Shown: positions 7,611 to 48,710 of the stretch, in pieces
Layout of the letters: every line of letters starts with the position of its first letter
Position numbering within the stretch: the first letter of the stretch is position 1
DNA from: Ascidiella aspersa
Lineage: Eukaryota
Assembly (NCBI GenBank): GCA_963924565.1
Contig: OZ004615.1
Coordinates: 6,758,001-6,822,000 of the forward strand
Length of the DNA: 64,000 bases
Direction: 5' to 3'
The notes under the pieces: generated by a model
The model's input: the letters and a program-made list of their open reading frames with translations, nothing else
The model's database searches: none
What the model was told of the DNA's origin: nothing
Position numbers and translations under genes: made by a program

Positions 7611-10600
7611 CTTTAAAAAGGGAGAACAAGATATATTTCACTTCGGGTCCAATCTATTGTCAGAATTTCACATTTTCAAGTATTAACCTTTGCATACATG
7701 GCAGCAACGTGCGCAACACACTGCCCAAGCAACATTCTCGTAAGGTTTGCGCTGAAACGTCATTTACACATGTAATTTCCAGCGAATGGCTTCAAATTGT
7801 TTCATTGATAAAGATTCGTTTTATTTAACATTAGGGTATCACCAAACACTTTTAGAGTAAAGGTGAGAAAAGCAATATATTAGAAGGAAAAATATTGCGT
7901 AAAACTATAACTAAAACAGTCTAACGATCGAAGCATACGCTAAGCGACTTGCTTCTTAAAGAAAGTAAAAAATAACTGAATTAGGTGCATGGCAATTAAT
8001 GCTAAATATTAAATCGGACAAAAGCCTACAACACCCGGTATTCCCAGGCGGTCACCCATCCAAGTACTAACCGGGCCCGACGTTGCTTAACTTCCCAGAT
8101 CGGACGAGATGGGGTGGATTCAACGTGGTATGGTCGTAGGCGAAGGACGGTGATTAGGCTTAGCCTTTATAGCGCAGGCTTCGAGCGTATGGCTTTGTGA
8201 CGACACAACGAATAAATGCGTAGCTTAAACACAAGCTTTCGCCTACGACCATACCACGTTGAATCCACCCCATCTCGTCCGATCTGGGAAGTTAAGCAAC
8301 GTCGGGCCCGGTTAGTACTTGGATGGGTGACCGCCTGGGAATACCGGGTGTTGTAGGCTTTTGATTTTTTTAGGCAGTGTATTTCTAACGAGATTGATCA
8401 CGAAAACGCTTACATTTATTTGTTAAGGGGCAAGACACTTGTGTAGTGTAGTTGTATTTTTGTGTCGCTTTGCTTAGTAAAGATAGCCGATAGGCTTTAG
8501 GCTGCCTAAAGGTTGGGACGGAATCATATTGGTAAACTTTGTTTTCGTTTTATTTGGGAAAGAATGTTCTAAATACATAAATATAAGCCATAGAACATTT
8601 CGATTGCATTTTCTTCTTAGCAAAATGTTTATCAAATTTGTTTTCAATGTTATGCGTTTTTCTTATAAAGATTATAACCTAAAAACGTTTATTTAGGGAA
8701 TATGTGACCGCATTGACCATCCTGGTGGCGAACGACCTATTGCTTGCTCAAGTTTTTCTCAATTCTTGACTAAAGTGCCCAAGTCACTGTTTTCAAATGA
8801 AAATGACTTTACTTGACTGAAGCCTTTTGGCCAAAATGACTTGATTTGACTTAAGTTTTTGAAACAAATGACTTTGGAAGCATTTTTTCTTTTAAATTAT
8901 ATTATTTCTCATAATTTTTATACATAAAACAATTTGATTGTTATACGTGTTGTTTATGATATGTTTTATTAAGATATTGCTCATAATCGGCTACGTTTAT
9001 CAGTGTTTTTTTTTGTATGACTACGACTTGAATTGAAGTTGACTTACTCCAATTATGACTTGAGTGGGACTTGATTGGACAACCGGTGACTTAGACTGGG
9101 ACTGGACTTTTGAAAGGACTTAAATTTACAACACTGCGAAATTCCCACTTACGATCTTTGAGGCCGTGAAAGACGAGCAGCCTCCGTTCGTCATCCCTTT
9201 TCAGGTCGATCTTTGCTAGTAGGTCGCTTCTCTGGTATCCGAAGGGGTTCGACAGTGGAGTGCCAAGCACCTTTTCCGCTCCGAAAGAAGCTGCAACCAA
9301 AAGTAAACATAAGTTGGCCTAAAGTGTGTATTATTTAATCATAATTGAAAAGTTTGATGCCTTTAAAGTTGAACTTTATCGGAATTTGTTTTTTTTATGT
9401 CGCATTACGCCTCATAGCACGCTTTTTTACACCCAGCGTACTTTGAAGTACAGACCTCTAGTTATTCAAGTTTTTTGCGTCAGTAACACACTTCTTTGCG
9501 AGCACGTGCCTGTGGATATAGTGGACTTCACCACCGCATTTTACTCGGGCTTGTGCTTCTACTTCGTGCATTTTAATTGCTTTCATTCTACCTTGACCTG
9601 ATGAAGCACGGTTGTGTGAAAGCTTGTCGAGAATCCAATACAATTTTTCTTTTTTACTGCCACCTGATTATCCTATCTTTAATCGTTACCCGTACCATTC
9701 AAAGGGGTGTCTCTATGCTCAGTTGGTAATGTCGCGAATGATTCTCTCGAAGTTAAAACGTGGTGCTTTTGTCCGTTTAAGCAAATGTGACCGATGTGTT
9801 CGCTGCACGAATGTTATCACGGCTTTTTTCTACTTCAGTTAATTTTGAACACGACTTCGTTCGACAACAGCTGGTTTCTTAAAATTACTTGTTTTATGAC
9901 GTAATAAAAGTTTTTTTTGGTCCATCCCAAATAAAATAACCGGATCCGCCCATGATAATGCTGGTTTCTCTGCTTATGATTTGATTTGAAACTTGCCACG
10001 AAAAAATAAGGGCTATGGCTAAAAATATGTTTCTTCCAAATTTAGTGTTATATTTTTTTCGTGACAACATTCATACATAGTGTGCTTAATTAGTCAACCG
10101 AGAACATCGAGTCCTTAGGACTTTGCTAGTTATACGTGGTCTTAATCGAGTTCCGAGTCCCGAGTGCGACTCTAGCAAAACAAACCGACGGAGTGTTCCG
10201 AGTGCGCAGCCTTGATCAGTACTGCTAATTTATCTGTTTTCACATGAATCTACTTTGCACAAACTTACTTAGACCGTGTATCACACGTTAAAACAAGTTT
10301 CGTAGACAAGCTGTAGTTTTGTAAAAAAGTTAGACGTGTTTTTCGGGCTATACTTACAGTAGAGTTTCCAGTCGACGATTGGCGCCACGGCGACGCCACA
10401 TTTGAAGGTAGGATCGCTTTGGCCCAGGGCCAGAATGGACACGAAGCCTCCGTAGCCAGTTCCTATCAGTCCAACCGTTGAAACGAGCACGCCCCACTTT
10501 GTATGCAAGTACCTGGGTGAAAAGAAAATTCGAAATTAGAACCTTATCAAATACGGCGTAATAGAAAATGTTGCACTTTAAAAACCGTTAGGAAGGTATA

Positions 10601-13600
10601 AAAGTTTAGCTTTTTATCAAAATGTTAAATCAGGCAAAAGCCTACAACACCCGGTATTCCCAGGCGGTCACCCATCCAAGTACTAACCGGGCCCGACGTT
10701 GCTTAACTTCCCAGATCGGACGAGATGGGGTGGATTCAACGTGGTATGGTCGTAGGCGAAGGGTTTTGTTAAAGCTACGCATTTATCCGTTATGTCGTCA
10801 CAAAGCCAGACGCTCGAAGCCTGCGCTATAAAGGCTAAGCGTGAACAGGTAACTTCGCCTACGACCATACCACGTTGAATCCACCCCATCTCGTCCGATC
10901 TGGGAAGTTAAGCAACGTCGGGCCCGGTTAGTACTTGGATGGGTGACCGCCTGGGAATACCGGGTGTTGTAGGCTTTTGAGCATTTTGAGGGTTGTATTG
11001 ATTGGTTTCCAGCAAAACATTTTTTTGGAATATCACTACTTCGGTTATGGAGAGTTTATATTTTGTTTATTAGTTTGGCCGTTTAATTTACATCGTATTG
11101 CATCGTGTTTACATAATTTAACGGAGAGCGGCAAAGCAATTTCAAAATAAAAACTTTTACACAAGGGGCGGCCAACAACGGCTACGGCTAGAGAGCGGTA
11201 TTTTTTTTAGAACCTTTGCTTGATTTACCTATTACCGGTACTGACATGTCTGACTTAAGCTACGACAGCTTGCCTTGATTGCATTATTGAAAAAATCCTC
11301 CCGTGTGAATAACAATTTGTATTAATATAGCCTACTCAATATTGTTAATATTCAACATTTACAACCCATTTAGCTGGCCAAAGGTAGGCCTGTACCCGTA
11401 ACGTGATACAAGTCCCAAACATTGACGTCACAACTTACTCAAGAACGGCCATCATGTCCTTGACCTCCAGGGTGCCAGGGTCGTCGGCGGGGGCTAAGAG
11501 GGTCCGGTCGCCCCTATCGGACGAGCCCCTGCCGTCCACATACACAGATATCACCCCGTCATTGGTTGTCATGTACTCGCCGAAGCCCAGACGAAAACGA
11601 AAGTCGGCGCTCTGACTCTCTAGCTCCCCGCTGCGGAAAATATTAATTTACTTTATTTTAAGATTTGCTTTTAAGATTGCTTTCGTTGAATACACTGTTG
11701 CTGCCAGGCAATTTATCAATCGCAAAATTTATCTTCCCGGAAAACGAAATATTTACGGTTCTTTACCAGAACATTGTTGCGAATAATTTCTCTCGTTGTT
11801 TTGACTGGAGCAACCGAACAATTACAGTCGTATAATAATCGACTATGTTGAGGTGAAGTAAATATATCCAATTGTAATCCAATTAGTGATTACAGCCTGT
11901 GTGCTCAAATTATTTAGTAAAAACAGTTATTGTTAATATCAAAAGAGACGGTGTCTTTAATCAGCGCAAACCGACCTCATTCTCAACAGGACGACGTAGT
12001 AATGTATGAACTTTTTTCAGGTGGCATTGAATTATTTACTAATCGTATTTAACACAAACCAACAACTCCATACAGAATCGGAATAGCATCGATCACAAGC
12101 GCAATTAACGCAACACCGGCTTAGAATCCTATAGTTATAATTTTACAAAATATCGGCCCTTTTTAGACCGCATTGGTATTTAGCTTACATCAGCAGTAGG
12201 CTACAACTTACACGTGGATTACGACGGGACGCTTGACGATCAGCTGCGATGGCGGGAGAAGAAATTTGAAGTTGATTTCTACGAGAAGACAAAATTGAAA
12301 ACTTGAACCTCTATTTTTGGCAGTTTTTGCGACTAAATTCTGTGGGTGGTTTTCACAGAAACCCAAAAACAGTTTACCTTTATTGTCTATACGGTAATTA
12401 AAGAGTATTGTACAGTTTGCCTACCCCTAAATAACCCTTCAGGTCGAGAAAACCAGGTTTAGACTGTATCGTAAAATGTAATCAAGTCAGTCATTTTTTA
12501 AGACATAAGGTTACGTCAGATGTTATAGTTCTGCATTACGAAACATTATCGCCATTTAAAACCAAAGCCACATTTAAAATTGGGCTAACCTTTCAAAGAG
12601 TTTAATTTTTTTGATACACATTCAGCGGAGAAACACTTATGCTGACGTGTTCGATATTTGACTCATAAGCTTGTTTCTTATATTTCCTCTGCAATCGAGT
12701 GTTAATGTTTTCAAAATCCGTACAAAACACAATTTGTTTTCTACTAAAGCGTGTCGAGAAAGCCAACGTACTTCCGTTACTCGTTTGTACAGAACCGCAT
12801 CGAAAGAATGTTGTCAAGTTCCGAGTCGTTGTGTTTGCGAGTTGGCTATACGAGTTAAGTAGACGAGTCTGAGTTATTTCCACATCTATTGCACTGGTCG
12901 CGACTGAATTACCGAGTTCAGCGACCGACGAGTAGGGGACCATAGGGCCTGTAGGAAAAGAGGGATTTTTTTTTAGTTTTAATTTTTACTAAATAAAAGT
13001 AAAATGTTGCGTATCGGGTGAATGTGCAGTGACAGTATTCTGCCCATTGGCCCAAAAGTAGACCGGTAATCATTCAAGTGTCAGTAAGTGTTCGGACCAA
13101 GTGCTCAGAAAACCATTCTCCATTCAAGGAGCTGGAGTTGCCACTTGGTTGGAGGTAGGGCCAGACTTAAACTGCGCATCGGCAGAAAGTTAACTTTTTT
13201 AGCTTCAGGTTACGGTGTAAGTGTTAATATCTAAAATGGAGGTTAAAGTTTAATATTTACTGCCCCAAAACAAATTCGGCTTTACCCAGAAAAATGGCAG
13301 GATACTAACCGCAGAAAATCGTTCTACAGTCGTTTTACGTGCAAAAAAAATGTCTTATGTTAAGTATACAGTAAAATATGGATTTCGCATAATTCGAATT
13401 GCGATTTCGTTCCGCAAATAACGACTTTGCTTGTTTTTGTTAGTTTAGAACAGCGGTTCCCAAACTTTTCTAAAAAATTTGCCTGGCGGACCCATTGCAA
13501 TTATTTTGATATTTCGCGGCCCTATAAAATTTCAAGGGTCAGTCGACCCATATTTCCTGTAATACACTAGTGCAGTCACGGTTCTTTCTAATGTAACAAC

Positions 13601-16600
13601 CTTCCAACTCAGGGTGGTCCACGGTTGACGGCATCGCGGGCCACAATATTTCTTGCATATTCTTTGCGGGCCACATAAAGTAGAATAAATAAATGCGTAC
13701 CAGAAGCGGATCAACGTTTTTCGTTTGGTCGAGGCATGAAATGTTTAATGATAACGTCACAAAGTAACATGGAAAGACAGATACGCTCCAGAAACTTTCT
13801 TCTGTTGTCGTACTTGTGCGCAAATAAAATCGAATGTTATGAGACTGGGAAAACCGGTGTGCGCGAAGCTCGAAAAATTTGCGTACTTGACAAAAATTTT
13901 AATTAGAAGACTGCATTTTATAAGCGTAGAATGTTCGCGTAAACGAGATGTTATCATTTCGCGCAAAAAGGTTTAATTAGCCAGATATATTTGGCTAAAA
14001 TTGCAGCTGGGCTTGGACCACCCTGTTCTAACTAATGCGAACGATTCGCTGATAGCAGGTAGTACAGCATAATAGATGCTATATGATATCACAATAGACA
14101 TCATAAAACACGCTATATTATCGAATAATAAAGCATAACTAAAGACAATAAAGATGGCAGATAATGTTTAAAACATAGACTAATGTTTAGGCACTTAAAA
14201 GACTAATTCTCCTTGCGGACCCTCCGAAAATGCCGTACGGATCCCATTTGGTCCGCGGACCCCAGTTTGGAAACCGCTGGTTTAAAACAATGGTTCTTTG
14301 CAATCCCTTATGATGGACATTTAACAACAACACTTCATGTACCCCAGTCATTTTTGTCAAAAGTCAAGTCAAAAGCCAGGTGTCAGTTCAGAATCAAGAA
14401 ACATTGTTTCAAATTCAAACCTAACTTGAAGTTTCGAATTTAAAAATGTGATGCGAAAAGCCTTTAAAAGGTTGAAAACGGATCGCAAGAAATGCCTGAA
14501 ACGTGAATATAATACTTAGTTATCCGATAGGCACTGGACGCGTAGTAAAAGGCCTATTACAACCTGTATTAGGGTGTTGGTTCCTATCCCAATATCACCC
14601 GACATCCCTATAGCTCGTACGCAAAACCCAGTTCTCGAAGCAACTCACCCAAACAGTGCAATAACAACCAGCTCGACGATTCTCCAAACTTGGCGTCGTA
14701 GTAGAGGCAGGGCTCGGCCCAAACCGGCGCCGGACCTTTCTCGGTGGCACCGCAAAGGTCCCGGTTCCCGTCCGGACAAGTCAGGCACTTTCGTAGGGGC
14801 CGGGCGCCCACCGACACCGCATAGACGTGGCGCTCGCGTTCGTCCGCCTCGTTGCTGACGTAATAGACGAGGCGCTTTGTGACGTCATAGTGAAGCAGCT
14901 TGCTGACCTCCCAGAGGCCGTCGGTGAGAAATCGCTGGAAGGGAGGTTTCTACGGCGAAAAGTTTTTTTTTCTCGTTATATGTAAAAACAAACTTGCCCA
15001 CACAGACAATGCAACGAAGTTATGGTTTTCATGGTTTCGAATTTCCATTGTATGAGGTTAAGAAGTAAAACTATTTGTAAAAAAGGCAACAATGACTTTA
15101 CCATAAACATTTAACTGAAGCACCGAATCGGCCTTAATTGCCCAGATAAAACTGCTAATTACCAAAACTAAGTGATGGGTATAGGTTTTATTCAATACTT
15201 GTGAAAGACTTTACAGTTTAAAAAATCCGAAGGTACATAACCTGCTTCAATCAGAACATAAAAATGCTCAAAAGCCTACAACACCCGGTATTCCCAGGCG
15301 GTCACCCATCCAAGTACTAACCGGGCCCGACGTTGCTTAACTTCCCAGATCGGACGAGATGGGGTGGATTCAACGTGGTATGGTCGTAGGCGAAGGGGTT
15401 TGTTAAAGCTACGCATTTAGCCGTTATGTCGTCACAAAGCCAGACGCTCGAAGCCTGCGCTATAAAGGCTAAGCGTGAACAGGCACCTACGCCTACGACC
15501 ATACCACGTTGAATCCACCCCATCTCGTCCGATCTGGGAAGTTAAGCAACGTCGGGCCCGGTTAGTACTTGGATGGGTGACCGCCTGGGAATACCGGGTG
15601 TTGTAGGCTTTTGGCCGATTGACAGTTTAGGGTAGTACATTGCAATTGTACGAGACAATTTTTGAACATTTAACAAAAAACAAACAACTTTTTTTAATTT
15701 GTAAATAGCTTCTCTATCAAATATAAGCCTTTGTATTGGATCTGGGAAGAGCGAATATTGTAAAACCAGTTACTTCATACAAATAAGATTTTGCTTAGCA
15801 GGTCCCTTGCTGATTTTTTAAAGATTAACTTGTCAATATTATGCAAACCGCGCAAATATCAAGATTCCTGCAACATTTTTGTGGCAGCCTTAAAATGCTG
15901 AGAGCAACTACGCGTTGATAAATTAACCCGACGCTCCCAAACCGGCTTACCATTGTGTAGTTGACCATTAGAATGTGTCTGTACCGCCCGTTGTTGCCGT
16001 GGTTATACGGAGCAATGTAGAAGAATACCCCGGGATGGTCAGTTGTCAGGTAAGGTTCATTCTGTGTAAGAGGTGTTAGTGGTTTATGATTAACATACCA
16101 ATCGACAGTCTAGTTGCATACGAGTTTTAAGCCTTATAGTGAGTATATAGTTGACTACACCATCTTATTTTTAAACCAGTATGAAACTTTTAGGTTTTAA
16201 AAAGCTTATGTCCAGCAATCCAACCAATGCAGTACTCTGGCAATTTAGTATTATTGCCATCTACAGATGTTTAGAAAACGATTTAATTTGCATAGCAAAC
16301 CTGCCCTTATCGAAAAGTCCGCTGCTACATTGCATGACAAAAGTGTACTAAATTTTAAGGTAATTAGAGCAAAAAGCAACGACTTACCAGGTTCGGAATC
16401 CATCCGCCAGGGGTCTCTAGAGAGGACTTGACCTTGAGAATGTCATCCACGCACGTGCTCATGGTTGGGTAGCATTGTTGCGTCACACTAACGGTCTGCG
16501 TGCGGTTGGACCACGTGATCAACAGGGCTTCGTCATTTCGCATCCACGTGACTGCCTGGAGGGTGTCTAGGCGCTCTCTGTGTGATGTCATAAGAAAGGT

Positions 16601-19600
16601 TTTGAGACACATCATTAGTAGAATGGACAATAACTCTTATCCTTTAATTGACCCACGTCATAAAGTAGCACTCCTGAATTGTTGTTTGTAAAAAAAATAA
16701 TAAAAATGAGTTCTAACGCAGTTCGAATGTTATCTCAGCGACAGGTGGCAATTGACAAGCAAAACGAAGCTAGACATAATCATTTTTTTTTAATATTGAA
16801 CGCATTCGTAGCCCAAAATGCTTTTATAACCAGCTAAAAATCACTATTTGTTAAACGTGCTTTGTGCCATAAAAAAGTTCAAATAGGAAACGTACAACCT
16901 TTAAACCCCTCTTAAAAACGACTTGTTTACTTTTACATTTAACAACTAACCTGTCAACTAGGGGCCGCACCAGAGTGACCTTGTTCAAGGTTATAAGGTC
17001 AACCACGTGCATCGTCACGGTTGGATTGTGGTAGCCAGGCTGAAAAAAAAGTGGATTGTAACAAACTTATAACGATTACTTTTATAAATAATGTAAAATG
17101 AAGTAACACGTGTAACAAAACGTTTAAAGCCATTAATTGTCACAAAAACGCCTAATCCATTCAATGTTTTACGCCTTCGAAGAGAAATATTTTTCACGCT
17201 TTTAATTAAACACCTTTCCGACAACCTTCTATTTTGTGGTCTTGCAACGTCCAAATCGGCTCGACTTGATAAAACGTACCTTTGCGTATCTCAACGATTC
17301 GATAGCTGGGTACACCAGGGACTTTCTCCCTGCGACGTATGACGTCATCTCTTGTTGGGGTACAAGGGAGTCGTCGAAAGTGGCGAAGGCCAAGTAGCGG
17401 CCACTTGGAGACCACCAGTGGGCAATGTGCGTCTTCAAGATTTCTTCTACAATAAAAAAGGCAGCTTGATATACTAAGACTTTAATCTTTGATTCTTGCA
17501 TATTGAAATACGAGCCTATAGACACTGCGTCAGTCGCTCATCCTTGAAAGTGAAAAATAGTAATTGCTACAAATATAGGAACGAATATCAAAGACACAGT
17601 GTAGACTGTTGACGTTGTATACAGCACATTGTAAATCTTCTCATCACAAAGCGTACATTTTTAGGGTGCTCAACTTTACATATTTGGGTGCACGCGAAAC
17701 AAAACGAAATTTTAGTTGTGAAAACCTGATTCTTTATAACCTTCGAAACACTCCTTGGCAAAGTTATTTTAATTTGGGATTACGATCGCAGACCGGCAGA
17801 CTTCGAATATGAAGTCATTGTTGCCGTTACAGTTGTTATTATTATTATCCGTCAGGCCGCGTTTTGCGCAACGGCGAGCCTTTATGGCTTCCCGAGGGAC
17901 AGAAAGCAATTCGAAACTCATGCTTTTTTGAAGTTTTGGGACCTTGGGCGCACTTCTGACTTGCGGCATTGATTTGACTGATGGTCGATCAATGGGCTTT
18001 CGCCCATCTCCGCCAAGGAAATTGATCGGCGGGAGGGGCGCGGAAATCAATGTTTCCACAAACCAACTAGCCACAACTCTTGATTTGCACTTAGCAAATA
18101 GAATATTATGTTTGATTTCGGAACTTATGCAGACCGTTGGCCTCTTTAAGACATTTTAAATTTACAATTCACGTTGACGGGTCATCTCTTAAGTATAATC
18201 GGTGTCAAGGACACAGAGGATATACAAACAAACACCTGTCAAATCAGGTGTAAAAAACAGTCACAGACAGAGTAAAACGTAATAAAAAAAATTCATGAGC
18301 ACAACGAGGCATCTAAAATGAATAAATAGCCTTAAAAATAAAAACCAAACTTGGCCCTTATGAAAGACAAAGAAAAGTGCGCCGAGCATATTTAAGGTTT
18401 ACCTGATTACCCTATTTAGAATTACACGGCTAATTACAAAGATTGAACACATTCAAAGAGCTTATGCTGCAGTTAAAGAATCTATAGCCGTGGCGTTTGG
18501 GCATGGCATTAAGCACATGTGCTCTAAACGTCGTACGATGACAAACAGCAAATAAAAGCACCACACCTTCGTAAAGCCAGTCGGCTATCCCGTTGGTGAC
18601 CTGTCCTGGAATCCCGTTACCGGTCAACGCTTGTGACTCGGCATGTACGCTCTTGCGGTAGAAGATGTCGCCTCCGACGATGTAAATTAATTGGGTGCGA
18701 TTTGGCCCGAAGCCGGCAAACTGGAACCCGGCTTTCGAGTTGTTGTGAATCAGCTGCCTTGGTTTGCTGCGAAGAAAGCCGTATATATTTTAAAGAAGGG
18801 GTTCTTTACCTTTTTGTATGTTTTACCCTATTAACAAAGATGAATATCAGATTTATGCTCAATATATAAAGTGGTGCTCATTTAATAAAAAAAACGTAAG
18901 TAACAAGTTACAGCAGTTATATTCAGTGCGACGGCTGCCCTTGCGTTTTGGCAACGAGTTTTTTCAATGTCTTAGAAAGTAGTAGGTAGTGCACAACGAA
19001 TATCAGATTTAAGTCGGTTTCGTTCTTTAGATTTAATAGTAAGCAATGCAGAGAAGCCGCTTCGCATAGGTTAGTTAAAGAAACGAATCAGAATATTCAG
19101 AGCTTGAATGCCTATCCTTGGATTTACCAAAACGATGAAATTTATCCCCTGGGGTAAATTTACCCCAGGTTAAGAAGGGCTATTTAAAGCCTTTGTTTCG
19201 CCTTTGGCATGCGAATAATTTTAGATTTACTCGACGAAGGTCAAGACTTCCCGAAAACGATATTCACAATTCGAACGAATAATTAATGAGACAACTAGAG
19301 GTTCTCGTGAGACTTCGGGGATTTCTGCTGATTTATCGGTGCTCAATAAACTTGCGGAATATCTGGTACTGTAATAAATTTCAGGATATTTATAGAGTTT
19401 ATAAATATAGTTCTGGGATTTTTCCGATATGTAAATAACGTGGAAGGTACCTGATTGTACTAAATTTCAAGACATTTTTAGAGTGTTTTATAATTTGAAG
19501 AAATCATAAAAATGATTTCATTTTATAAAGATTTTCCTATACAGCAGTTTAATAATAGGGATTGCTGACACTATACTGCGAAACAGGTCGATATTTTCCT

Positions 19601-48072: not shown

Positions 48073-48580
48073 CATTTTTTAACAATGTGCGCACATTCAA
48101 AACTGCCTTCAAAAATGTGCGCACCTTTTTTAACAATGTGCGCACATTTTGAACTACCTTCAAAAATGTGCGCTCTTTTTTAACAATGTGCGCACATTTT
48201 GGACTGCCTTCAAAAATGTGCGCTCTTTTTTAACAATGTGCGCACATTTAAAACTGCCTTCAAAAATGTGCGCTCTTTTTTAACAATGTGCGCACATTTT
48301 GAACTGCCTTCAAAAATGTGCGCTCTTTTTTAACAATGTGCGCACATTTTGAACTGCCTTCAAAAATGTGCGCACATCGCACATTTTGAACTACATTGAA
48401 AAATGTGAGCACTTTTTTTAGCAATGTGCGCACATTTAAAACTGCCTTCAAAAATGTGCGCTCTTTTTTAACAATGTGCGCACATTTTGAACTGCCTTGA
48501 AAAATGTGCGCACATCGCACATTTTGAACTGCATTCAAAAATGTGCGCATTGTTTTCACAGTGTGCGCACATTTTAAAAT
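48073..48580. repeat. 50-bp minisatellite, about 10 units
   Basis: Unit TAACAATGTGCGCACATTTTGAACTGCCTTCAAAAATGTGCGCTCTTTTT, period 50 (e.g. 48131, 48181, 48231, 48281, 48331). Confidence 0.95.
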
Positions 48581-48583
48581 GCC

Positions 48584-48710
48584 TTAGAGTTAGAGTTAGT
48601 TAGGGTTAGACTTAGAGTACAGAGTCTAGCTAACTCTACCTCTAACTCTACCTCTACCTCTACCTCTACCTCTACCTCTACCTCTACCTCTAACTCTAAC
48701 TCTAACTCTA
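48584..48710. repeat. Hexamer microsatellite (TTAGAG)n followed by (CTCTAC/CTCTAA)n
   Basis: Directly visible; the two tracts are reverse-complementary. Confidence 0.9.

What the first reader, a model, noticed from the sequence alone, without database searches (positions are those of the whole stretch)
8019..15613. Three intronic cassettes of head-to-head 5S rRNA gene pairs dispersed through a DPP6/10-like gene
Seen: 8022-8360, 10638-10976 and 15272-15610 each consist of 5S(-), a 99-bp spacer and 5S(+), in three different introns of the host gene. All six 120-nt genes are identical and end in T-runs, while spacers and flanks have diverged. Helix III reads CCCAUC...GAUCUGGG instead of the common CCGAUC...GAUCUCGG, a compensatory pair change. 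Established: animal 5S genes usually form head-to-tail tandem arrays or are linked to other repeated genes. Inference: the repeating unit here is a divergently transcribed palindromic 5S dimer that spreads locally into introns, behaving like a foldback element whose inverted arms are complete functional genes. No TSDs were visible, so the spreading mechanism is unknown.
Basis: partly seen in the sequence, partly recalled or inferred. Interest (0 to 1): 0.85.

Follow-up and report, generated by a model that had tools for sequence, protein, structure and literature searches.

The report
Back-to-back 5S rRNA gene pairs in introns
Three introns of one sea-squirt gene each hold two identical 5S ribosomal RNA genes placed back to back around a shared 99-base promoter spacer; these belong to a small dispersed 5S class that sits beside a megabase tandem array of a second 5S type, much like the two-type systems of frogs and fish.

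Summary
Six identical 120-nt 5S genes (Rfam 116 bits each) form three head-to-head pairs, each with a 99-bp spacer, in three different introns of a minus-strand DPP6/10-like gene. One correction: the spacers are conserved (83-95% identical among the three), and cassette 1 is simply inverted.

The genome is a tunicate. It holds about 30 copies of this 5S type, 22 of them identical, on five contigs. I found 7 complete and 5 truncated head-to-head cassettes at three loci, in or near the DPP-like gene, in IFT122, and on contig C5.

Two more cassettes just upstream of the window are segmental-duplication paralogs. Their flanks are 83% identical, yet the genes show only 2 differences in 360 nt. One paralog pair has an inverted spacer between colinear flanks, which shows recombination between the arms.

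Contig C4 carries a head-to-tail array of about 1.6 Mb (roughly 8,500 units) of a second 5S type. It differs at 13 positions, including four compensated base pairs.

Best reading: functional, divergently transcribed Pol III gene pairs of a low-copy 5S class, kept by selection and gene conversion. I found no target-site duplications, so the mobile foldback-element reading is not supported. Other first-reader notes of this scan had already flagged related 5S loci in this genome.

The parts
8022..8141 (-). 5S rRNA gene, left arm of cassette 1
   Evidence: Rfam RF00001 116 bits; identical to the other five genes; TATA-like box (CCTTTATA on the + strand, 8164-8171) lies at -23 to -30
8142..8240 (.). 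99-bp spacer of cassette 1, inverted relative to cassettes 2 and 3; holds two TATA-like boxes and a conserved core at 8191-8204
8241..8360 (+). 5S rRNA gene, right arm of cassette 1
   Evidence: Rfam 116 bits; ATAAATGC at -29 to -22
10638..10757 (-). 5S rRNA gene, left arm of cassette 2
   Evidence: Rfam 116 bits
10758..10856 (.). 99-bp spacer of cassette 2; TATA-like boxes at 10779-10786 and 10827-10834, conserved core at 10794-10807; inverted relative to its flank paralog C9b
10857..10976 (+). 5S rRNA gene, right arm of cassette 2
   Evidence: Rfam 116 bits; TATAAAGG at -30 to -23
15272..15391 (-). 5S rRNA gene, left arm of cassette 3
   Evidence: Rfam 116 bits
15392..15490 (.). 99-bp spacer of cassette 3; 98% identical to the spacer of C9b, which lies 17.6 kb away
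15491..15610 (+). 5S rRNA gene, right arm of cassette 3
   Evidence: Rfam 116 bits
7438..7527 (-). last exon of the DPP6/10-like host gene (C-terminal motif with the catalytic-His position, NQDHSL)
   Evidence: tblastn to the C-termini of P0044 and P0049: weak E-values but at the right position
9121..9306 (-). host exon (Peptidase_S9 part with the Asp region)
   Evidence: tblastn with P0054, E 0.002
10356..10532 (-). host exon with GTGYGG in place of the catalytic GWSYGG (Ser replaced by Gly)
   Evidence: Pfam Peptidase_S9 E 2.8e-08; tblastn
11450..11617 (-). host exon (start of the Peptidase_S9 domain)
   Evidence: tblastn E 1e-05 to 4e-05
14668..14928 (-). host exon (DPPIV_N, C-terminal part)
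   Evidence: tblastn E 7e-07
16364..16630 (-). host exon (DPPIV_N profile positions 180-237)
   Evidence: Pfam DPPIV_N E 1.7e-04
17280..17447 (-). host exon (DPPIV_N profile positions 91-151)
   Evidence: Pfam E 2.7e-14; tblastn

Best explanation
Each cassette is a pair of functional 5S rRNA genes transcribed divergently by RNA polymerase III. Each gene has its own TATA-like box at about -30 to -22 in the shared 99-bp spacer, an intact 5S fold and a TTTT terminator. The pairs belong to a low-copy, dispersed 5S class ('D type', about 30 genes). This class coexists in a tunicate genome with a tandem array of about 1.6 Mb of a second, structurally compensated 5S type ('T type').

Shown here:
- The genes are held identical while neutral flanks of the same age have diverged by 17%.
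- Spacers are exchanged between cassettes.
- The inverted arms recombine: one paralog pair has a flipped spacer.
- One arm is often lost, leaving stumps.
- Cassettes multiply with segmental duplications.

Inferred:
- Purifying selection on the RNA, together with gene conversion, keeps the genes identical.
- The 99-bp spacing and the invariant spacer core are promoter constraints.
- The two 5S types are used differently, as in the oocyte/somatic systems of frogs and fish.
- The older copies in separate introns arose by DNA-level copying (duplication followed by decay of everything but the selected module, or local template switching), not by transposition.
For: - 5S identity and fold: Rfam 116 bits, and 33 of 34 consensus pairs formed.
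- TATA-like boxes at -30..-23 and -29..-22 in all three cassettes, and in every D-type gene in the genome. Such boxes are a known upstream element of animal 5S genes (PMC6204057, PMC3215682).
- 22 copies are 100% identical on five contigs.
- Paralog pairs C9a/w1 and C9b/w2 have flanks 82.5-82.9% identical over 363-848 bp. They show only 2 differences in 360 nt of gene, P = 2e-26 under 17% divergence.
- C9b and w2 have colinear flanks but an inverted spacer.
- Spacer similarity does not follow flank paralogy: C9b-w3 98%, C9a-w1 79%.
- Spacer length is exactly 99 bp in 6 of 7 complete cassettes, and 98-99 bp in all 5 truncated ones, despite 2-40% substitution.
- The T-type array is real. 19 of 19 sampled points between 23.38 and 24.95 Mb are array, and all units score 81-108 bits.
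- D and T differ at 13 positions, with pairs 31-46, 67-108, 68-107 and 69-106 compensated.
- The same genome layout (thousands of tandem copies versus a dozen spaced copies, 9 nt apart in sequence) is the documented maternal/somatic 5S system of zebrafish (PMC5340908).
Against:
- T4 is a minimal Pol III terminator.
- The existence of about 8,500 other 5S genes leaves open that the D type contributes little RNA.
- The D-type count is a lower bound, because only the best candidates were scored.
- How cassettes came to lie in different introns without detectable flank homology (w1, w2, w3; likewise in IFT122) was not shown.
- The palindrome was not confirmed with long reads.
Confidence: 0.7

Rival explanations
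1. The palindromic 5S dimer is a mobile, foldback-like DNA element that inserts itself into nearby introns. Its inverted arms act as terminal repeats.
For: Arms of 120-152 nt fold at -186 kcal/mol, z = -31. Cassettes with the same 99-bp spacer occur on three contigs. Within the DPP-like gene and IFT122, cassettes lie in different introns and share no flank homology beyond about 15 nt.
Against: No target-site duplications beyond chance in seven cassettes. Only 12 cassettes in 308 Mb. Spacers differ by 2-40% and paralog flanks by 17%, so the copies are old rather than recently transposed. Two cassettes arose by a segmental duplication that also copied host exons. Same-strand single 5S genes in ZW10 show the same 'core only' conservation without any palindrome, so sharp homology boundaries can come from selection on the Pol III module alone.
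Confidence: 0.12
2. The cassettes are non-functional relics. The working 5S rRNA comes from the C4 tandem array, and the identity of the dispersed copies reflects gene conversion alone.
For: The array has about 8,500 units that all pass Rfam at 81-108 bits. Each has a TATA-like box near -34 to -29 and a T5 run about 20 nt downstream.
Against: Conservation stops at the gene and promoter borders on five contigs. The array units themselves are heterogeneous (57 distinct sequences among 101 units, median 31 of 34 pairs), whereas the D type is uniform. Decaying D copies do exist (C2a left gene 92.5%, C9a stump), which shows that copies released from constraint drift quickly.
Confidence: 0.08
3. The palindromes are assembly artefacts, such as foldback chimeras of long reads.
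For: None found.
Against: There are seven complete cassettes with different spacers and flanks, five truncated derivatives, and paralogs with 17% diverged flanks that keep the same structure. The asymmetric 99-bp spacer occurs in both orientations.
Confidence: 0.02
4. The C4 array is a 5S-derived satellite rather than a second functional 5S type. On this reading the genome has one 5S class (D type) and no dual system.
For: Within the array, variation is not lower at paired positions than at unpaired ones (0.042 versus 0.027). There is a higher-order repeat structure, no T-run directly after the gene, and a G-G mismatch at pair 17-61 in the consensus.
Against: Four compensated pairs separate the T consensus from the D type, and both keep 33 of 34 pairs. 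12 of 101 units equal the consensus. Every unit is full length.
Confidence: 0.3

Closest known systems
Maternal (oocyte) versus somatic 5S rRNA gene systems of zebrafish and Xenopus (PMC5340908)
   Same: There are two 5S sequence types in one genome. One type is present in thousands of head-to-tail copies with short spacers at one locus. The other has a few tens of copies with kb-scale spacing elsewhere. The types differ by about ten nucleotides (13 here, 9 in zebrafish), including positions in the internal control region (67-69 and 97 here).
   Different: Stage-specific expression was not tested here. The low-copy class is split over five contigs, lies in introns, and is partly arranged as head-to-head pairs, none of which that paper's abstract reports for zebrafish. 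The organism here is a tunicate, not a vertebrate.
Conventional animal 5S rDNA: head-to-tail repeats with a TATA-like box near -30 (for example Donax clams, PMC6204057; Pollicipes barnacles, PMC3215682)
   Same: A 120-nt gene, a TATA-like element at about -30 to -25, a T-run terminator, and genes much more conserved than spacers.
   Different: In the cassettes, two genes face away from each other across one spacer, not head to tail, and they lie singly inside introns of protein-coding genes.
Inverted 5S copies or inversions inside 5S arrays (tilapia, Martins et al. 2002 as cited in PMC3215682; pike and quinoa as mentioned in 10.1101/774828)
   Same: 5S genes in opposite orientations exist in other genomes.
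   Different: Judging from a reference title and one passing sentence (I did not read the primary papers), those are irregularities or pseudogenes within tandem arrays. They are not a conserved dimer with a fixed 99-bp spacer, two promoters and intact identical genes.
Divergent small-RNA gene pairs sharing a short spacer: C. elegans 5S/SL1 repeat, and trypanosomatid tRNA genes placed head to head about 95-100 bp upstream of U6, U3 and 7SL genes (from my own knowledge, not checked here)
   Same: Two small-RNA genes are transcribed away from each other across a spacer of about 100 bp whose length matters.
   Different: In those cases the partners are different genes. Here both arms are the same 5S gene, so the unit is also a near-perfect palindrome that can recombine with itself.
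Dispersed 5S genes of fungi such as Neurospora (TATA box plus internal elements; cited in PMC6204057)
   Same: Low-copy, dispersed 5S genes, each carrying its own upstream TATA box.
   Different: The fungal genes are single, not paired, and no tandem array of a second type sits beside them.

Membership tests
5S rRNA gene (Rfam RF00001) | Covariance-model score above the gathering threshold over the full model | tested here: met
   116 bits against a threshold of 38, model positions 1-120, for all six genes
5S rRNA gene (Rfam RF00001) | Helices I-V of the consensus structure can form | tested here: met
   33 of 34 consensus pairs are standard pairs. The C31-G46 flip keeps helix III intact
5S rRNA gene (Rfam RF00001) | Pol III gene features: internal control region (box A 50-64, IE 67-72, box C 80-97), upstream TATA-like box, T-run terminator | tested here: inconclusive
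   The TATA-like boxes and TTTT runs are present. The internal control region was judged only by position (coordinates taken from PMC6204057), not by a binding model or an assay
5S rRNA gene (Rfam RF00001) | The RNA is made | not testable with these tools
Foldback / inverted-repeat transposable element | Long inverted terminal arms | tested here: met
   Arms of 120 nt at 100% complementarity (151-152 nt at 93-94%), with 41-43 nt between them
Foldback / inverted-repeat transposable element | Target-site duplications at the insertion borders | tested here: not met
   The longest direct repeats between 45-bp flanks are 5-8 nt, reached by 8-91% of shuffles
Foldback / inverted-repeat transposable element | Many dispersed copies with unrelated flanks and recent identity | tested here: not met
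   Only 12 cassettes at three loci. Spacers differ by 2-40%, and two cassettes share 83%-identical flanks through segmental duplication
Dual (maternal/somatic-like) 5S rRNA system | Two distinct, structurally valid 5S sequence types in one genome | tested here: met
   13 differences, four compensated pairs, and both types keep 33 of 34 pairs
Dual (maternal/somatic-like) 5S rRNA system | One type in a very large tandem array, the other in few spaced copies at other loci | tested here: met
   About 1.6 Mb on C4 versus about 30 genes on C2, C3, C5, C6, C7 and C9
Dual (maternal/somatic-like) 5S rRNA system | Stage- or tissue-specific expression of the two types | not testable with these tools
   No read data could be obtained
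Classical head-to-tail 5S rDNA array | Same-strand genes at a fixed short period | tested here: not met
   The cassettes are head-to-head and 2.3-10 kb apart. The C4 array does meet this feature, with a 183-193 bp period

The most novel reading that the evidence does not exclude
A tunicate, the sister group of vertebrates, runs a two-type 5S rRNA system. Its low-copy type is organised as palindromic dimers with a bidirectional promoter. These dimers copy themselves at the DNA level into introns of nearby host genes (for example by hairpin-induced template switching or re-insertion of excised circles), flip by recombination between their own arms, and are then held identical by selection. That would make them a gene family whose unit of function is also its unit of dispersal.
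Probability: 0.18. Interest if true: 0.8.

Novelty: new variant of a known kind. Interest (0 to 1): 0.6.

Why it matters
5S genes are a textbook case of tandem arrays evolving in concert. Here the same genome shows both that classical form and a different one: intact gene pairs sharing one 99-bp spacer, scattered in introns of unrelated genes, and kept identical although they are not in an array.

Segmental-duplication paralogs with 17% diverged flanks serve as an internal clock. They allow selection, gene conversion, arm-to-arm inversion and arm loss to be read directly from one assembly.

If the two 5S types prove to be used at different stages, the oocyte/somatic 5S system known from frogs and fish would extend to tunicates. 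That would raise the question of whether it predates vertebrates or arose repeatedly.

The perfect 120-bp inverted arms also mean that each host pre-mRNA intron can form a long double-stranded RNA hairpin. This may matter for the host genes, but it is inference only.

Tried and rejected
- **Read evidence.** Expression and long-read support for the palindromes are therefore untested.
- **Species name.** The window has no ORF of 130 aa or more to look up. Only the lineage was established: tunicate, from a cellulose-synthase GT2 domain and a GH6 domain 3 kb apart on one strand.
- **ZW10 check.** A Pfam Zw10_N search of the genome found nothing. ZW10_C2 and Zw10_middle exons were then found directly next to the C3 5S genes.
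- **Literature.** Searches for a described head-to-head 5S dimer or for tunicate 5S organisation found only primers 'in opposite orientation', inversions inside arrays, tRNA arrangements and bare 5S counts. The library lacks most subscription journals, so this is weak evidence of novelty.
- **Trypanosomatid parallel.** The paper I opened did not contain the statement I wanted about companion tRNA genes, so that comparison rests on my own knowledge.
- **Target-site duplications.** None found.
- **Linked Pol III genes.** No tRNA genes or other Rfam families lie in the window or in the other 5S loci.
- **Cross-species test of orthologous introns.** Not attempted, because no collection available here holds tunicate genomes.


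Full report
**What is there.** Rfam finds exactly six features in the 64-kb window, all 5S rRNA at 116 bits (gathering score 38) and covering the whole model. They lie at 8023-8141(-), 8241-8359(+), 10639-10757(-), 10857-10975(+), 15273-15391(-) and 15491-15609(+).
- The six 120-nt genes are identical.
- Each pair is head to head across exactly 99 bp.
- Each gene runs into a TTTT.
- As single-stranded DNA a cassette folds into a 120-bp perfect stem at -186 kcal/mol; shuffles give -48 +/- 4, z = -31.
- The repeat finder extends the arms to 151-152 nt at 93-94%, because the two promoter-proximal spacer ends resemble each other. That leaves 41-43 unique central bases.
- The helix III remark is right. 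The genes have C31-G46 where the Rfam consensus has G-C, and 33 of 34 consensus pairs form.

**Correction to the observation.** The spacers are not diverged.
- Cassette 1 is the reverse complement of cassette 2 over 354 nt at 95%.
- Read in one orientation, the three spacers are 83-95% identical with no indel.
- Each spacer holds two TATA-like boxes. TATAAAGG lies at -30 to -23 of one gene, and ATAAATGC (CTAAATGC in cassette 3) at -29 to -22 of the other.
- A central core, GTCGTCACAAAGC, is invariant in all nine related spacers on three contigs.
- TATA-like boxes at -30 to -25 are a recognised upstream element of animal 5S genes (PMC6204057 and PMC3215682).
- Beyond the T-run, the flanks share only about 12-15 nt, in two recognisable types.
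- There are no target-site duplications beyond chance.

**Host gene.** Exons of a DPPIV-family gene lie on the minus strand. Pfam finds DPPIV_N at 17229-17525 and 16364-16630, and Peptidase_S9 at 10281-10508.
- I mapped exons one by one with full-length relatives recovered by a representative search. They lie at 23381-23223, 18738-18538, 17447-17280, 14928-14668, 11617-11450, 10532-10356, 9306-9121 and 7527-7438.
- The catalytic-serine motif reads GTGYGG, so 'DPP6/10-like' is fair. The vertebrate DPP6 relatives in the same alignment read GKDYGG.
- Cassette 3 lies between the 16364 and 14928 exons, cassette 2 between 11450 and 10532, and cassette 1 between 9121 and 7527. These are three different introns, as claimed.
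- The last exon rests on a weak but correctly placed match.

**Lineage.** The assembly is 308.6 Mb in 75 contigs. A cellulose-synthase GT2 domain and a GH6 domain lie 3 kb apart on one strand of contig C5. From my own knowledge, that fusion is the hallmark of tunicates. Other agents' notes on this genome also call it a probable sea squirt. I could not name the species.

**Genome-wide picture of this 5S type ('D type').** A BLAST of the gene against the whole assembly lists 22 copies at 100% over 1-120 on five contigs (C2, C3, C5, C6, C9), plus eight at 93-100%. The tool scores only the best candidates, so this is a lower bound.
- Two more cassettes lie just upstream of the window. C9b (L035:7629-7967) is complete. 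C9a (L035:1344 onward) has lost its right gene after nucleotide 9.
- Contig C2 has three complete cassettes: two with 99-bp spacers, and one with an 86-bp spacer and a decayed left gene at 92.5%. It also has one gene with a 10-nt stump of a partner exactly 99 bp upstream.
- Contig C5 has three same-strand genes, each preceded at 98-99 bp by an inverted stump of 9 or 25 nt of 5S start.
- In total that makes 7 complete and 5 truncated head-to-head cassettes at three loci. The dimer is therefore an old, recurrent unit that tends to lose one arm.
- The nine genes of the C3 cluster and the single genes on C6, C7 and C3b show no stump.
- Every D-type gene has a TATA-like box near -30 and ends in TTTTG.

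**Other hosts.** The C2 cluster lies in introns of IFT122. Pfam finds IFT122 beta-propeller and TPR exons on either side of the cassettes. The C3 cluster lies in and after ZW10, between its Zw10_middle and ZW10_C2 exons, which confirms an earlier first-reader note. Within the C3 cluster, some units share over 300 bp of flank (local tandem duplication). Others share only about 45 bp upstream, the gene and the terminator.

**An internal clock.** Downstream of the host gene lies a partial copy of its 3' part.
- One pseudo-exon of the copy contains stop codons. The copy runs over window coordinates about -750 to -9260, that is inside L035.
- C9b sits in it where cassette 2 sits in the gene, and C9a where cassette 1 sits.
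- The flanks are 82.5-82.9% identical over 363-848 bp.
- The three surviving gene pairs show 2 differences in 360 nt. Under 17% divergence that has P = 2e-26.
- The cassettes therefore predate this duplication, and the genes have been held fixed since.
- C9b and cassette 2 have colinear flanks on both sides but an inverted spacer. This is direct evidence for recombination between the inverted arms. It agrees with another first-reader note, although that note named cassette 2 as the recombinant, and I cannot say which of the two flipped.
- Next to C9a, a 1.3-1.7 kb segment is inverted relative to the flank of cassette 1.
- Spacer similarity does not follow flank paralogy. C9b is 98% identical to cassette 3, whose flanks are unrelated, and only 93% to its paralog cassette 2. 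C9a is 79% identical to its paralog cassette 1 but 91% to cassettes 2 and 3. Spacers are therefore exchanged between cassettes by gene conversion.

**A second 5S type ('T type').** Contig C4 carries a head-to-tail array with a period of 183-193 bp, all on one strand.
- All 19 sampled points from 23.38 to 24.95 Mb are array. Points at 23.37 and 25.0 Mb are not. The array is therefore about 1.6 Mb, or roughly 8,500 units.
- Every unit in a 10-kb sample scores 81-108 bits.
- Its consensus differs from the D type at 13 positions. Pairs 31-46, 67-108 and 68-107 are compensated on both sides, as is the helix-extending pair 69-106. Two changes are one-sided but still pair. One D-type mismatch is repaired in T, and one pair (17-61) is broken in T. 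Both types keep 33 of 34 pairs.
- T units have a TATA-like box near -34 to -29. They have no T-run at the gene end; a T5 lies about 20 nt downstream.
- The array is heterogeneous: 57 distinct sequences in 101 units, with a mean of 96.5% identity to its consensus.

**Reading.** The layout of thousands of tandem copies of one type and a few tens of spaced copies of another, about ten nucleotides apart, matches the maternal/somatic 5S system described for zebrafish (PMC5340908). I take the cassettes to be working, divergently transcribed Pol III gene pairs of the low-copy class.
- Shown: structure, promoter-like boxes, terminators, extreme conservation against a dated neutral background, inter-cassette conversion, arm-to-arm inversion, arm loss, and spread with a segmental duplication.
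- Inferred: transcription, the functional meaning of the fixed 99 bp and the invariant core, differential use of the two types, and the route by which older copies reached separate introns.
- For that last point two routes fit. One is duplication of blocks that included exons, followed by decay of everything except the selected module. The other is local DNA-level copying of the small unit, for example template switching provoked by the palindrome.
- The same core-only conservation in the non-palindromic ZW10 cluster shows that sharp homology borders need not mark a mobile unit.
- The foldback-transposon reading fails the target-site-duplication test and the copy-number test.

**Limits.** Expression, Pol III occupancy and long-read support are untested. 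No collection available here holds tunicate genomes, so orthologous introns were not compared. My literature searches found no description of a head-to-head 5S dimer unit or of tunicate 5S organisation beyond gene counts, but the library is incomplete.

**Verdict.** This is a real and well-defined feature, a new variant of 5S gene organisation, and probably one half of a two-type 5S system in a tunicate. It is not a mobile element on present evidence.

Noticed in passing
G000:C4, about 23.38-24.95 Mb (samples L041, L042, L044-L061, L080): A head-to-tail array of about 1.6 Mb, with roughly 8,500 units of 183-193 bp, of a second 5S rRNA type. It differs from the window's type at 13 positions, including four compensated base pairs. 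The units are heterogeneous and show a higher-order repeat.
   Followed up: partly
L035:742-9252 (window coordinates about -9260 to -750): A partial copy of the 3' part of the DPP-like gene lies just downstream of the gene; one of its pseudo-exons contains stop codons. It carries paralogs of cassettes 1 and 2. One segment of 1.3-1.7 kb is inverted relative to the original.
   Followed up: partly
L032:6005-9809 and L036:320-8927 (G000:C2, 10.711-10.724 Mb): Four 5S cassettes (three complete, one truncated) lie in introns of IFT122. In cassette C2b the palindrome extends 22 nt into the spacer on both sides, so both genes have the same promoter-proximal sequence.
   Followed up: partly
L034 and L037 (G000:C3, 24.643-24.663 Mb): Nine same-strand 5S genes with their own promoter type (TATATAGC near -30) lie in and after the ZW10 gene. 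Some units are tandem duplicates sharing over 300 bp of flank. Others share only about 45 bp upstream plus the gene.
   Followed up: partly
G000:C5:19610700-19614090: A cellulose-synthase GT2 domain and a glycoside hydrolase family 6 domain lie on one strand 3 kb apart. This is the tunicate cellulose synthase signature, and I used it to place the genome.
   Followed up: no
window 10356-10532: The DPP-like host has Gly in place of the catalytic Ser (GTGYGG). This suggests a non-enzymatic DPP6/10-type protein in a tunicate.
   Followed up: no
window 48075-48585: About nine tandem copies of a 50-bp unit that contains a short palindrome (TGTGCGCACA), with 88- and 138-bp higher-order periods. Unexplained.
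   Followed up: no
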